Assembly: GCA_002269645.1 (NCBI GenBank) | Contig: NIVC01000617.1 | Span: forward strand, 248,001-312,000 | Reading direction: 5' to 3' | DNA: 64,000 bases | Origin: Macrostomum lignano | Lineage: Eukaryota | Position numbers and translations under genes: made by a program | Shown here: one piece after another, positions 22,430 to 63,358 of the stretch | How positions within the stretch are numbered: the stretch's first letter is position 1 | How the letters are laid out: each line of letters opens with the position of its first letter | The notes under the pieces: generated by a model | Database searches by the model: none | Told to the model about the DNA's origin: nothing | Seen by the model: the letters and a program-made list of their open reading frames with translations, nothing else

Positions 22430-22538
22430 ATGCCGCAGAGCCATTTGAGTTCCATGTTTTACTCAAGCTCCCCAACTAAAACCAGAGGCCGAACAGTGAA
22501 CTCTACTCTTTTTCTGACTAAGAGAAACGCAGAATCAG
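22430..22538 (+). CDS. Candidate alternative first exon of stomatin-like gene (MPQSHLSS..NAES)
   Basis: ATG-open frame to TCA G|gtcagt, phase 1; poor start context (C at -3). Confidence 0.3.
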
Positions 22539-22817
22539 GTCAGTGTATTTTCTATTCAACTACCCTACATGCCCTTGGTGTATTTTCTCCTACATATGCG
22601 AGCTTTGCAAGCGATTGGCGAATGCCAGCATTGACCAAAGCGGTGCCGGCGGACTCTGATTGGTCAAAAGTGTTTTCTCAACTTTCTTCGGGGGGGGGGC
22701 AAACTTCTAGCTGTGAATGGAATTCGAACTTTAGCTGGGCATTAGAGACACTTGGGAGAGTAGAGCATAGTCTGCTGGTATAGTCTGCTGATTTAAAATA
22801 TAAAATTTACTTTGAGT

Positions 22818-22998
22818 ATGAAAACTGGGGTCACAGTGAGCATCAATGACTTGGAGAAGTCCGAGACACAGTTACAGCCGCAGCAACAGCTGCAGCAGCA
22901 GCAACAACAACAACAACAACAACAACAACAACAACAGCAACAGCAGTACAGTCGGAACAGAAAATACTCGGTTGTCGACCCTCAAACGGATCTAGTTG
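22818..22998 (+). CDS. Candidate alternative first exon of stomatin-like gene, polyQ (MKTGVTVSINDLEKSE..QQQ..VDPQTDLV)
   Basis: AGTATGA start, in-frame CAG/CAA polyQ, donor GTT G|gtaagt; 181 nt = phase 1, matches acceptor at 63008. Confidence 0.7.
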
Positions 22999-23044
22999 GT
23001 AAGTGGTAGCTGAGTGCTGACGAGGGACATAAATAAGATTGACA

Positions 23045-24357
23045 AGGGGATGGCATGTGGATAGAGAGGCGGATAGAGAAAGAAGGATAGAGAGAGGTGG
23101 ATAGAGAGGTGGATAGAGAGGAGGTAAATAGAGAGAGGCGGATAGAGAAAGAAGGATAGAGAGAAGTGGATAGAGAGAGGTGGATAGAGAGAGGTGGATA
23201 TAGAGAGGTGGATAGAAAGGAGGTGAATAGAGAGAGGTGGATTTTTTTATAGAGGCAGGGGGTCGTGTGCACCCTGGCGCACTTTTAGCGACATAGGCAC
23301 ACAACCGGCGAGAGGCATTGCTGCCCATTCCGCCGACTCCCCTGAGCAGGCATACAAGCGCGCGGATACGTACGCAGGCACACACTCACACAGGAGTGTA
23401 CAGCGGCCCTAACTTTATATTATCGTTAGGCATGTACACTTCACTGCGCCTTGGGGGGTTGGCTCTCAAGGCCGTTAATTGCACGAGCAGAGCCAAGCCG
23501 AGATTCCAATTCAGCCCCAAATTAATGTGACTGCACTTGGAATCGAGCCTGGGTCGCTGGCACACCAGAGCCTGCGCTAGACTGCTGGGCTACGGCCCAT
23601 ATGATAGAGAGAGTGGATAGGTGGATAGAGAGGTGGATAGAGAGAGGTGGATAGAGAGAGGTGGATAGAGAGAGGTGAATATAGAGAAGTGGGTAGAGAG
23701 AGGTGGATAGAGAGAGGTGGATAGAGAGAGGTGGATAGAGAGAGGTGAATATAGAGAAGTGGGTAGAGAGAGGTGGATAGAGAGAGGTGGATAGAGAGGG
23801 GTGGATAGAGAGAGGTGGATAGAGAGAGGTGGATATAGAGAGGTGGATAGAGAGAGGTGGATAGAGAGAGGTGGATAGAGAGGGGTGGATAGAGAAAGGT
23901 GGATATAGAGAGGTGGATAGAGAGAGGTGGATATAGAGAGGTGGATATAAAGAGGGGGATAGAGAGGAGGTGGATAGAGGTGGATATAGAGAGGTGGATA
24001 GAGAGAGGTGGATAGAGAGAGGTGGATAGAGAGAGGTGGATAGAGAGAGGTGGATAGAGAGAGGTGGATAGAGAGAGGTGGATAGAGAGAGGTGGATAGA
24101 GAGGTGGATAGAGAGAGGTGGATAGAGAGAGGTGGATAGAGAGGTGGATAGAGAGAGGTTGATAGAGAGAGGTGGATAGAGAGAGGTGGATAGAGAGAGG
24201 TGGATATAGAGAGGTGGATAGAGAGGAGGTGGATAGAGAGAGGTGGATAGAGAGAGGTGGATAGAGAGAGGTGGATATAGAGAGGTGGATAGAGAGGAGG
24301 TGGATAGAGAGAGGTGGATAGAGAGGAGGTGGATAGAGAGAGGTGGATAGAGAGAGG
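23045..24357. repeat. About 14-bp purine-rich minisatellite split by a SINE
   Basis: Unit GTGGATAGAGAGAG on both sides of 23242-23598. Confidence 0.93.
23242..23598 (-). mobile_element. tRNA-derived SINE family B, apparently full length with A-tail
   Basis: Minus strand GGGCCGTAGCCCAGCAG (A box-like), GGCTCGATTCC (B box-like), ends TATAAAAAAA; second copy at 45330. Confidence 0.8.
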
Positions 24358-24886
24358 TGTACAGCCGGTGACACCGCAAAGCACTCAAACAGCTGAAGTC
24401 ACTCCAATCCCCCCAACATTCAGTCGGCAAAAAACTGGTGTCGGATGAAAATTGCAAAAACAGGGAGAGCAAGAGAGACAGAAATGGGGAGAAGAGACCT
24501 CTGCCGAGATTTACTCCTTTGAGCTCGGCAGATCTGCGGGGGAGATGATGAGTGGGGGGCGGCTCGGTCCGCCCTGGCTGCCACTCTCCGTCCCGAACTG
24601 CCGGGGTCCGAGGTAAATAATGCAGCCGCTCGGCCCGCGCGTGGGGCATAAATTATGCAAAACAGGGGAGCGACGGGAGCCGGTGTCGAAGGGGCGGAGG
24701 CGGGGAAGAGGCAGCGGGGCATTCCTCCGCCCCAGCCCCGCGCTGGACTGTAGTGGGCCGCCTGGTTTGATAGTCGAAGTTCTAATAAAATTGAGTCTTT
24801 TCGAATCGAGCGTTGCTTCTGATTCCAGAGCAGGCCTGTGATAGCAACTCCACTCTGCTGCTTGCGTGCGATCTCCAGCTTTGTAC

Positions 24887-62469: not shown

Positions 62470-62563
62470 ATGGCTGGACGTTTTGTCTTTCAATTAAAAT
62501 TTTACAGTTACAGTTCCATTTTGCCTAGTTCACAAGCTCTACTTCTCTTCTCCAATACCCTCG
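62470..62563 (+). CDS. Candidate proximal first exon (MAGRFVFQ..SNTL)
   Basis: GAAATGG start, 94 nt open to CTC G|gtacgt, phase 1; composition is not coding-like. Confidence 0.35.
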
Positions 62564-63007
62564 GTACGTGCATACAATTTTCTGATAATGCCAAGAGCTC
62601 TTGAAAAAAGAAGCAAACCTGAGCCAGCCAAGCACCCCAATGCAGCAGTTATCTGCTACGCTTTACACAGCAACGGAAGGGCGCGCCAGTGTTGAGTTGA
62701 AAATCTCGCAAAATTTGGCTTTATCAAACAGGAACTGGCTCAGTCATTCAGTATATTTCTCCAAGTCAAAAACGAACAGGAAGCAGCCTCCAAAGTGAGA
62801 TTCCTTCAACCAGAAGGCTTCCATTGAGGCTGGCGTTGCCGCAATAAATTGATGAAGAGAGTATGTACCGTCTTCATTGTTAGGCCGCTTCCTCAAGCGG
62901 TCGTTTTGCGTTAAAAGCCCTCTACTTGAATGACAATGATTTCTTTGAAGCAAAAACCGCCGCCTGCCCGTGCATGCATCTCCTTTTGCGCTTTTTTGTC
63001 ACCTCAG

Positions 63008-63117
63008 GTCAACAACGCGACAGCAAGGGCATGGGATTCTGTGGCGCAGTGCTGCTGTTCCTGTCCTACACGCTTATCTTTGCCACGTTCCCGTTCTCCC
63101 TGTGTCTCTGCATCAAG
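63008..63117 (+). CDS. STOM-like: Stomatin/MEC-2-like first constant exon: palmitoylation-type Cys and hydrophobic hairpin
   Basis: acceptor ttttttgtcacctcag|gt phase 1; GFCGAVLLFLSYTLIFATFPFSLCLCIK; donor AAG|gtacga. Confidence 0.92.
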
Positions 63118-63202
63118 GTACGAAAGCGTCTTATTAATGCAATGGAAACTAAAAATGAATTATTCATCTTAGTGAATGCACGTTGTCGAAAACCTTTTGC
63201 AG

Positions 63203-63358
63203 GTCGTTGCTGAGTACGAACGGACCGTGATCTTCCGCCTGGGCCGCATCCTTGAGGGAGGCGCCAAGGGTCCCGGCCTGTTTTTTATCGTGCCCTGCAT
63301 GGACATGATCCGCAAAGTGGACCTGCGTACCGTCACCTTTGATGTGCCGCCCCAGGAG
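63203..63358 (+). CDS. STOM-like: Stomatin SPFH (band 7) domain exon; gene continues beyond window
   Basis: [46 protein letters not shown]; acceptor ttttgcag|, donor GAG|gtgagt. Confidence 0.96.

What the first reader, a model, noticed from the sequence alone, without database searches (positions are those of the whole stretch)
22430..63358. Putative variable-first-exon array giving one stomatin many different N-termini
Seen in sequence: the constant exon at 63008 begins in phase 1. Upstream, at least seven short ATG-initiated open segments (22818, 39325, 48054, 50573, 53145, 59614, 62470) each end at a good donor (gtaagt, gtaagt, gtaagc, gtgagc, gtgagg, gtgagt, gtacgt) in phase 1. All seven have a purine at -3 of the ATG, and several sit in GC-rich or A-rich leader islands. 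Each joins in frame to QQRDSKGMGFCG. They share no visible similarity with each other, so unlike clustered protocadherin or UGT1A arrays they do not look duplication-derived. Established: the stomatin N-terminus is cytoplasmic, and stomatin/MEC-2 proteins modulate DEG/ENaC/ASIC and Piezo channels. Inference: a multi-promoter system that diversifies channel-regulator N-termini by cell type.
Basis: partly seen in the sequence, partly recalled or inferred. Interest (0 to 1): 0.85.

Follow-up and report, generated by a model that had tools for sequence, protein, structure and literature searches.

The report
Flatworm stomatin with alternative first exons
A Macrostomum lignano stomatin gene probably has about four alternative protein-coding first exons spread over 40 kb, not seven or more; this is an ordinary multi-promoter layout, and no transcript data could be checked here.

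Summary
The window is Macrostomum lignano DNA. The constant exons (63008-63117, 63203-63358) belong to the annotated stomatin gene BOX15_Mlig018945g1.

As a pattern they are not significant: I count 11 such segments, against 9.1 +/- 2.6 in shuffled sequence.

Taken one by one, four have independent support:
- **59614** is the annotated first exon.
- **50573** is conserved upstream of a diverged paralog. Its substitutions are biased toward synonymous changes and its phase-1 donor is kept.
- **22818** is orthologous to exon 1 of a monogenean stomatin. It has the same RKYSVVDP motif, the same spacing and the same phase-1 split-Gly junction.
- **39325** has only intrinsic support: top codon-usage score and a strong donor.

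Three look like chance:
- **48054** has 4 nt of coding sequence.
- **53145** has 10 nt.
- **62470** has background codon usage and neutral-looking changes, and its intron is missing in the paralog.

The exons share no similarity with each other, so this is not a protocadherin/UGT1A-type duplicated array. The best reading is ordinary alternative promoter and first-exon use that gives three or four cytoplasmic N-termini. No splice junction other than the one in the annotated gene model could be verified, because no transcript data were available. Cell-type specificity is untested.

The parts
22818..22998 (+). Exon A: candidate first coding exon, 60 codons + 1 nt (MKTGVTVSINDLEKSETQLQP-polyQ-YSRNRKYSVVDPQTDLV|G). 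Donor ttg|GTAAGT at 22999, phase 1. Probably the ancestral exon 1 of this stomatin.
   Evidence: ORF, donor and phase. RKYSVVDP + 5 residues + split Gly matches exon 1 of the Cichlidogyrus casuarinus stomatin P0014, which also ends in phase 1 in a split Gly codon. Codon-usage log-odds 0.05, against a background of about -0.38. In-frame stop at 22794 just upstream.
39325..39448 (+). Exon B: candidate first coding exon, 41 codons + 1 nt (MSNRVDPASQPIEQSIELAAATAGPSSTAGSTVALKPGYDV|S). Donor tca|GTAAGT at 39449, phase 1.
   Evidence: ORF, donor and phase. Codon-usage log-odds 0.28, level with exon C as the best + strand ORF in the region. GC 0.62 inside an AT-rich flank. TATATA at 39207 and CCAAT at 39165 upstream, which is weak evidence. 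No comparative sequence could be obtained.
50573..50678 (+). Exon C: candidate first coding exon, 35 codons + 1 nt (MSISESQREYPHHPVPVMGPMRVGSMRKDGVRESI|G). Donor ttg|GTGAGC at 50679, phase 1.
   Evidence: Conserved about 5.4 kb upstream of the paralog's annotated start at L001 4543-4638 (tblastn E = 6e-10), with an in-frame 1-codon indel and a phase-1 GTGAGT donor. Core pN/pS is 0.26 at pS about 0.6. All 4 differences from the about 95% identical copy L002 are synonymous. Exons C and D are the only non-repeat blocks shared with the paralog's 10 kb upstream region.
59614..59677 (+). Exon D: the annotated first coding exon, 21 codons + 1 nt (MHSAAMQDRDNPPATGPLSDP|G). Donor ccg|GTGAGT at 59678, phase 1.
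   Evidence: Exon D + exon 2 + exon 3 is 100% identical to residues 1-110 of PAA80959.1 / P0121. It is conserved in paralog proteins P0122, P0123 and P0001. pN/pS against L001 is 0.18.
63008..63117 (+). Constant exon 2. Phase-1 acceptor (cag|GT); encodes (G)QQRDSKGMGFCG plus the membrane hairpin AVLLFLSYTLIFATFPFSLCLCIK.
   Evidence: The phase-1 intron sits in a Gly codon at the homologous position in Cichlidogyrus and in the mollusc Solemya velum.
63203..63358 (+). Constant exon 3, the start of the Band 7/PHB domain ([15 protein letters not shown]...FDVPPQE).
   Evidence: Pfam PF01145 is recorded for the homologues.
48054..48057 (+). Rejected candidate: ATGG|gtaagc, 4 nt of coding sequence.
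   Evidence: It is too short to test. The same criteria give an equivalent 4-nt case at 40398. The fetched copies do not cover it.
53145..53154 (+). Rejected candidate: ATGCATTCGG|gtgagg, 10 nt of coding sequence.
   Evidence: In the about 95% identical copy L002, the -3 purine (A to T) and the last exon base (G to A) are both changed. It has no counterpart in paralog L001.
62470..62563 (+). Rejected candidate: a 31-codon ORF with a weak GTACGT donor, lying inside intron 1 of the annotated gene model.
   Evidence: Codon-usage log-odds -0.50, which is background; GC3 0.35. Against L002 it has 2 nonsynonymous and 1 synonymous change. Intron 1 of the paralog is only about 130 nt and has no counterpart.

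Best explanation
This is the 5' part of a Macrostomum lignano stomatin (Band 7/PHB) gene. The gene has an ancient phase-1 intron that splits a Gly codon just before the membrane hairpin. That leaves the short cytoplasmic N-terminus on its own exon.

Upstream of the common acceptor at 63008 lie four unrelated ATG-initiated coding exons, each ending in a strong phase-1 donor:
- A, 22818-22998
- B, 39325-39448
- C, 50573-50678
- D, 59614-59677

The most likely mechanism is ordinary alternative promoter and first-exon use. Transcription would start in front of one of these exons, and its donor would splice to exon 2, removing everything in between. The products would be stomatins with N-termini of 61, 42, 36 or 22 residues on an identical hairpin and PHB core.

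Exon A is the ancestral first exon, shared with a monogenean flatworm. Exons C and D arose before the split between the two M. lignano paralog genes. Exon B is undated.

What is shown: the exon anatomy, the annotated D-to-exon-2 join, coding-type conservation of C and D, and the orthology of A. What is inferred: that A, B and C are actually transcribed and spliced to 63008, that each has its own promoter, and any difference between cell types. The other three listed segments (48054, 53145, 62470) are chance ATG/GT combinations.
For: Identity of the gene. D + exon 2 + exon 3 is 100% identical to PAA80959.1.

Exon C. It is conserved upstream of paralog Mlig004665g1 at L001 4543-4638 (E = 6e-10), with an in-frame indel and a retained phase-1 GTGAGT donor. 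Its core pN/pS is 0.26 at pS about 0.6. That is comparable with D (0.18) and exon 2 (0.17), and introns at this divergence no longer align. All 4 differences from copy L002 are synonymous, which has P of about 0.002 under neutrality. C and D are the only non-repeat blocks conserved in the paralog's 10 kb upstream region.

Exon A. 'RKYSVVDPQTDLV|G' and exon 1 of Cichlidogyrus stomatin, 'RKYSVVDPNDAFP|G', are reciprocal best matches. Both end in phase 1 in a split Gly codon at the same distance from the motif. The same intron is present in Solemya velum.

Codon usage. Of 11 plus-strand ATG-to-GTRAG segments of at least 40 nt (21 on both strands) in non-repeat sequence, C, B, A and D rank 1st, 2nd, 4th and 5th on the + strand (0.29, 0.28, 0.05, 0.02). 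All other phase-1 segments score -0.33 or lower.

No competing gene. No other stomatin exon, no Pfam-recognisable ORF and no RNA gene lies between 22 and 63 kb that could claim these exons.
Against: No transcript or junction evidence could be obtained for A, B or C.

The NCBI annotation and UniProt models of all three M. lignano copies use only the D-type start. No database protein carries the A, B or C N-terminus, although those searches have low power.

The raw count of phase-1 candidates is at the chance level.

Use of A implies a 40-kb intron that is 39% tandem repeat, including a 4.7-kb pure pyrimidine tract. The species' mean intron is 1.1-1.4 kb (PMC5730564).

B rests only on composition and codon usage, from a model trained on about 1,200 codons. 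The promoter motifs are weak and common.
Confidence: 0.6

Rival explanations
1. There is only one real first exon (D, 59614). A, B and C are chance open segments or decayed relics, and the gene has a single N-terminus as annotated.
For: All annotated or UniProt models of the three gene copies start MHSAAMQ. The phase-1 count equals the shuffle expectation. No protein with another N-terminus was found. A 40-kb repeat-filled intron would be atypical for this genome (PMC5730564).
Against: C shows coding-type purifying selection in two independent comparisons and keeps its phase-1 donor. A keeps an intact ORF, a GTAAGT donor and the exact motif, spacing and phase of the monogenean exon 1. A to D stand out from all other candidates in codon usage.
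Confidence: 0.13
2. A, B and/or C are real transcribed exons but do not join stomatin exon 2. They would belong to separate unannotated short genes or non-coding transcripts. Alternatively they would be 5'-leader exons that splice to exon D or elsewhere, so their ORFs would act as upstream ORFs rather than as N-termini.
For: No junction data are available. M. lignano has many polycistronic and trans-spliced transcription units (38.8% of genes are trans-spliced, PMC5730564). There is an AG just before the ATG of A (ctttgag|tATG), so A need not be a true first exon.
Against: All four donors are in exactly the phase that exon 2 needs, and C keeps that phase in the paralog. A is orthologous to an exon that is joined to the hairpin exon in another flatworm. 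No downstream partner exons or other coding ORFs are detectable between 23 and 63 kb.
Confidence: 0.17
3. One reading: an array of seven or more variable first exons, all used, diversifies the stomatin N-terminus by cell type.
For: All seven satisfy the formal requirements of ATG, purine at -3, an open frame and a phase-1 donor.
Against: 48054 and 53145 encode 1-3 residues, and 53145 loses its -3 purine and -1 G in a 95% identical copy. 62470 has background codon usage and neutral-type changes, and lies in an intron that is reduced to about 130 nt in the paralog. Equally good unlisted candidates exist, and the count matches the shuffles.
Confidence: 0.05

Closest known systems
Alternative promoter / alternative first-exon genes in general, as widespread in metazoan genomes (own knowledge)
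   Same: There are several non-homologous ATG-containing first exons, each with a donor in the phase required by one common downstream acceptor. Use is mutually exclusive by construction. The variable part is a short terminal tail on an invariant core.
   Different: Nothing essential differs in architecture. Here the transcripts, transcription start sites and expression patterns are unverified. The span is unusual for this genome: 40 kb, against a mean intron of 1.1-1.4 kb (PMC5730564).
C. elegans mec-2/stomatin isoform diversity (Liang, Calovich-Benne & Norris 2021, PMC8934639)
   Same: A stomatin-family gene makes several protein isoforms that share the hairpin and stomatin domain and differ in a terminal tail. 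In C. elegans the isoforms are neuron-type specific and functionally distinct.
   Different: mec-2 isoforms differ at the C-terminus, through an alternative 3' splice site and a cassette exon controlled by MEC-8. Here the variation would be at the N-terminus, through alternative first exons. No expression or function data exist for the flatworm gene.
Clustered protocadherin and UGT1A variable-first-exon arrays
   Same: Many-to-one splicing of upstream first exons onto shared constant exons.
   Different: Those arrays are tandem duplicates of a large, homologous variable exon (about 10 to over 50 copies), each with a conserved promoter element. Here there are at most about four exons of 22-61 codons with no detectable similarity to each other. 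It works in a similar way at the splicing level but is not a member of that class.
Single-first-exon stomatin genes of other lophotrochozoans: Cichlidogyrus casuarinus 'Stomatin' (P0014, locus L003) and Solemya velum KAL5012922.1 (P0126, locus L004)
   Same: They have the same phase-1 intron in a Gly codon just before the hairpin. The Cichlidogyrus exon 1 carries the same RKYSVVDP motif as exon A.
   Different: Only one first exon is annotated in those species, 0.8-1.3 kb upstream of exon 2. No B-, C- or D-like sequence is present in the Cichlidogyrus locus.

Membership tests
Stomatin / Band 7 (PHB, SPFH) family | Band 7/PHB domain (Pfam PF01145) | tested here: met
   The translation of exons 2-3 hits 950 proteins, nearly all carrying PF01145. 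It is 100% identical to M. lignano PAA80959.1, annotated as a Band 7 domain protein. Only the first 52 residues of the domain lie inside the window.
Stomatin / Band 7 (PHB, SPFH) family | N-terminal hydrophobic hairpin directly before the PHB domain, preceded by a short cytoplasmic tail | tested here: met
   GFCGAVLLFLSYTLIFATFPFSLCLCIK is encoded by 63008-63117. It aligns with the hairpin region of stomatins from crustaceans, rotifers, flatworms and molluscs.
Alternative first-exon (multi-promoter) gene | Two or more ATG-containing 5' exons whose donors are phase-compatible with one common acceptor | tested here: met
   A, B, C and D (and the three rejected segments) all end in phase 1 and read through into QQRDSKGMGFCG.
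Alternative first-exon (multi-promoter) gene | Each alternative exon shows evidence of being a real coding exon (conservation, purifying selection, coding composition) | tested here: inconclusive
   Met for D (annotated; pN/pS 0.18), for C (pN/pS 0.26; 4 of 4 synonymous changes) and for A (orthologous exon in Cichlidogyrus). B has codon usage only. Not met for 48054, 53145 and 62470.
Alternative first-exon (multi-promoter) gene | Transcripts that join each first exon to the common exon | not testable with these tools
   No RNA-seq or cDNA resource is reachable. Only the D junction exists as a gene model.
Alternative first-exon (multi-promoter) gene | Separate transcription start sites or promoters for each first exon | not testable with these tools
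   Only TATA-like and CCAAT-like strings were seen upstream of A and B. These motifs occur about 0.16 and 0.56 times per 300 nt by chance.
Clustered variable-exon array (protocadherin / UGT1A type) | Variable exons are tandem paralogs of one another | tested here: not met
   All pairwise local alignments of the seven exon regions score within the shuffled-sequence range, apart from three short (13-26 nt) matches just above it. The peptides share no similarity.
Clustered variable-exon array (protocadherin / UGT1A type) | Large array (about 10 or more) of full-size variable exons feeding shared constant exons | tested here: not met
   At most four credible exons of 22-61 codons.

The most novel reading that the evidence does not exclude
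Four promoters spread over 40 kb of repeat-rich DNA would give this flatworm stomatin four unrelated cytoplasmic N-termini. One is the ancestral tail, which carries a conserved basic-x-Ser motif (RNRKYS, a possible basophilic-kinase site; my inference) and a polyQ run. The others are lineage-specific tails kept under selection in both paralog genes. Each tail would be used in a different cell type to tune interaction with mechanosensory or ion channels. The current annotation would be missing the ancestral first exon altogether.
Probability: 0.3. Interest if true: 0.45.

Novelty: new member of a known kind. Interest (0 to 1): 0.3.

Why it matters
If confirmed, the annotated M. lignano stomatin gene model is incomplete. 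It would lack three upstream coding first exons, including the ancestral one 40 kb away.

The stomatin N-terminus would then be a module that is swapped by promoter choice. That would complement the C-terminal isoform diversity known for C. elegans mec-2.

M. lignano can be made transgenic, and 1-2.5 kb upstream regions have worked as promoters there (PMC5730564). The promoter of each first exon could therefore be tested directly with reporters.

The case also carries a methodological point. ATG-open, phase-compatible donors occur at about nine per 40 kb by chance, so such lists need exon-by-exon evidence. As biology it is a routine gene architecture, not a new mechanism.

Tried and rejected
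1. Phase-1 enrichment as evidence. I rejected it: the count is 11, against 9.1 +/- 2.6 in shuffles, and one tandem repeat inflates the raw count to 25.

2. Searching 5.8 billion proteins with the concatenated variable peptides. Only D-type M. lignano proteins came back. The index is not exhaustive; it had missed the 100% identical P0121. A third search, with the A motif plus the hairpin, returned 'no candidate' and used the last search without result.

3. An exhaustive phmmer search of the A-joined isoform against 1.84 billion cluster representatives. Stomatin N-termini are too variable for this. No hit other than P0014 carries RKYSVVDP. The KPGFD / RVYARVED resemblance in Solemya is too short to count.

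4. Exact look-ups of ten constructed full-length isoforms, and of the genomic ORFs of A and B. Nothing is on record.

5. Looking for another gene that could own the exons. The window holds no second stomatin copy, no Pfam domain in ten other ORFs, and no Rfam family or tRNA.

6. Duplication origin of the exons. Rejected.

7. B as an internal exon following A. The A donor joined to the AG before B's ATG gives a frame that hits a stop, so they are not consecutive coding exons in the ATG frame. I checked this by reading the sequence.

8. Promoter motifs. TATA- and CCAAT-like strings are too common to be evidence.

9. Counterparts of A and B in the paralogous contigs. These could not be fetched, because the flank limit is 10 kb and there is no annotated handle gene upstream.
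Full report
**What the window is**

The two constant exons (63008-63117 and 63203-363358 read as 63203-63358) have good splice sites: cag|GT, AAG|gtacga, ttgcag|GTC and GAG|gtgagt. They translate to a stomatin N-terminal hairpin plus the start of the Band 7/PHB domain. 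The best database relatives are Macrostomum lignano proteins.

PAA80959.1 (BOX15_Mlig018945g1, P0121, 288 aa) is 100% identical to the 59614 exon + exon 2 + exon 3. The window is therefore M. lignano, and the 59614 segment (exon D) is the annotated first coding exon.

The window is not the exact contig that carries P0121. Locus L002 (NIVC01000556.1) aligns to window 48074-64000 at about 95% identity with indels. This fits the duplicated blocks of at least 95% identity described for this assembly (PMC5730564).

A more diverged paralog, Mlig004665g1 (P0123), sits in locus L001 (NIVC01002425.1). Its synonymous divergence from the window is about 0.54-0.72, and its intron 1 is only about 130 nt.

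About 48% of the window is tandem repeat. The upstream + strand gene (588 to about 6188) is a PI3-kinase.

**Checking the observation**

All seven segments are as described. Each has the ATG, a purine at -3, an open frame, the quoted donor and a length of 3n+1, and each reads in frame into QQRDSKGMGFCG.

The pattern itself carries no statistical weight. Dinucleotide shuffles give 9.1 +/- 2.6. Phase 0 gives 7 and phase 2 gives 2, and the minus strand gives 5-7 per phase.

A 30-nt tandem repeat at 30456-31180 makes 16 apparent phase-1 GTAAGA donors from one ATG. Unlisted candidates of equal formal quality exist at 40398, 56357 and 60423. Two listed exons have only 4 and 10 coding nucleotides. 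Each candidate therefore has to be judged on its own evidence.

**Exon D (59614-59677)**

This is the annotated first exon. It is conserved in the paralog at L001 10001-10064, where the peptide is 91% identical and pN/pS is 0.18. It differs from L002 by one synonymous change.

**Exon C (50573-50678)**

tblastn of its peptide against the paralog locus gives one hit. The hit lies about 5.4 kb upstream of the paralog's annotated start, at L001 4543-4638:
- window: ESQREYPHHPVPVMGPMRVGSM-RKDGVRESI
- paralog: EKKFAHHHHPVSVMGPMRVGSIRRRDGVREPV

The E-value is 6e-10. The indel is one whole codon. Most nucleotide differences fall at third codon positions. The paralog exon also ends at a GTGAGT donor in phase 1.

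Nei-Gojobori counts give a core pN/pS of 0.26 at pS 0.63. That is similar to exon D (0.18) and exon 2 (0.17). At this divergence the flanking non-coding DNA no longer aligns. In a tblastx comparison of the paralog's 10 kb upstream region with the window, C and D are the only shared non-repeat blocks.

Against the 95% copy L002, exon C has four differences, all synonymous. With S/(S+N) = 0.22, this has P of about 0.002 under neutrality. Exon C is therefore a coding exon under purifying selection. It sits upstream of both stomatin paralogs, in the phase that exon 2 requires.

**Exon A (22818-22998)**

Its C-terminal part, RKYSVVDPQTDLV|G, matches the N-terminus of a monogenean stomatin, Cichlidogyrus casuarinus P0014, which reads RKYSVVDPNDAFP|G.

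In the Cichlidogyrus locus (L003) this peptide is exon 1. It ends ...TTC CCG G|gtttgt, which is phase 1 inside a Gly codon, exactly five residues after the motif. It is joined to the hairpin exon 0.84 kb downstream. Exon A ends ...CTA GTT G|gtaagt, with the same spacing, the same phase and the same split Gly.

The match is the best reciprocal hit in both loci outside the constant exons: E = 0.007 in L003 and E = 0.36 for the best non-constant hit in the window.

The mollusc Solemya velum has the same phase-1 split-Gly intron before its hairpin exon. This exon 1 / exon 2 boundary is therefore ancient.

No other stomatin exons exist in the window, so exon A cannot belong to a second copy. I conclude that A is the ancestral first exon of this gene. 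It now lies 40 kb upstream of exon 2 and is missing from the annotation.

**Exon B (39325-39448)**

No comparative sequence could be fetched for B. The intrinsic evidence is a GTAAGT donor, an in-frame stop four codons upstream, and GC 0.62 inside an AT-rich flank.

I trained a codon-usage log-odds model on about 1,200 M. lignano codons, excluding the candidates themselves. B scores 0.28 and C scores 0.29. These are the two best + strand ORFs in the non-repeat part of the region. A (0.05) and D (0.02) come next.

The background mean is -0.38 +/- 0.28, and every other phase-1 segment scores -0.33 or lower. B is plausible but unproven.

**The other three candidates**

- **48054** is ATGG|gt. It is untestable, and an identical 4-nt case at 40398 shows how easily this arises.
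- **53145** loses its -3 purine and its -1 G in L002, and is absent from L001.
- **62470** has background codon usage (-0.50, GC3 0.35) and the weakest donor (GTACGT). Against L002 it has two nonsynonymous changes and one synonymous change. It lies in an intron that is about 130 nt long in the paralog.

I treat all three as chance.

**Mechanism**

The exon 1 / exon 2 boundary isolates the variable cytoplasmic tail from the hairpin and the PHB core. Any upstream exon with an ATG and a phase-1 donor can therefore supply a new N-terminus.

The best-supported reading is alternative promoter and first-exon use with three or four real first exons. A is ancestral. C and D are older than the paralog split. 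B is undated.

Splicing of A, B and C to 63008, separate promoters and any cell-type specificity are all inferences. No transcript data were reachable. Searches for proteins carrying the alternative N-termini found nothing, but they have low power.

The conserved RNRKYS / LRKYS string in A resembles a basophilic-kinase site. This is my speculation and was not tested.

**Comparison with known systems**

At the splicing level this works like any alternative-first-exon gene, and like protocadherin/UGT1A arrays. It fails the defining features of those arrays, because the exons are not paralogous and there are at most four.

Within the stomatin family, the nearest documented case of isoform diversification is C. 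elegans mec-2. There, neuron-specific isoforms differ at the C-terminus through alternative 3' splicing (PMC8934639). N-terminal diversification by promoter choice would complement that, but it would not be a new principle.

**Verdict**

Novelty: a new member of a known kind. Interest is modest. The practical result is a likely annotation gap and a testable set of promoters in a flatworm that can be made transgenic.

Noticed in passing
window 33784-38518: A 4.7-kb tract is almost pure pyrimidine on the + strand (12-nt unit TCTCTCCCTTTC; GC skew -1.0, AT skew -0.98). If exon A is used, the pre-mRNA would contain a 4.7-kb polypyrimidine run inside the intron.
   Followed up: partly
window 1-64000: About 48% of the window is tandem repeat with units of 4-182 nt (60 TRF rows with score >= 200). 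The fraction is 67% between the PI3K gene and exon A. The unique islands coincide with the candidate exons and their flanks.
   Followed up: partly
window 30456-31180: A 30-nt tandem repeat (CCTCACCAGAGCACCCTCACGGTAAGAGAC) creates one long ATG-open frame with 16 in-phase GTAAGA 'donors'. This is a trap for any scan based on donors and reading phase.
   Followed up: yes
window 588-6188 (+): The upstream neighbour is a PI3-kinase gene (Pfam PI3Ka and PI3_PI4_kinase domains). Its introns are filled with tandem repeats. Its 3' end was not mapped, and a PX- or C2-type tail may continue beyond 6188.
   Followed up: partly
L001 10065-10196 versus window 59678-63007: Intron 1 of the annotated gene model is about 130 nt in paralog Mlig004665g1 but 3.3 kb in the window. 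Intron sizes differ widely between the gene copies.
   Followed up: partly
L001 4405-4650: In the paralog, the ORF of the C-type exon extends about 46 codons further upstream (MYTSRPFTRIRRLQDKDSTSSQPAP...). In the window, in-frame stops lie just upstream of 50573. The N-terminal half of this exon is therefore not conserved between the copies.
   Followed up: partly
window 63404-63941: A tandem repeat with the 9-nt unit TGAGATTCA (higher-order 182-nt unit) starts 46 nt into the intron after exon 3.
   Followed up: no
L003 10001-10962 and L004 3001-4650: The phase-1 intron that splits a Gly codon just before the stomatin hairpin is shared by a monogenean, a macrostomid flatworm and a bivalve mollusc. 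It is a useful landmark for annotating stomatin 5' ends.
   Followed up: yes
window 47480-48011: A GC-rich unique island holds 123-166-aa ORFs with no Pfam match, just upstream of the 48054 candidate. A short stretch shows weak tblastx similarity to the upstream region of L001, on the opposite strand. Its nature is unknown.
   Followed up: no
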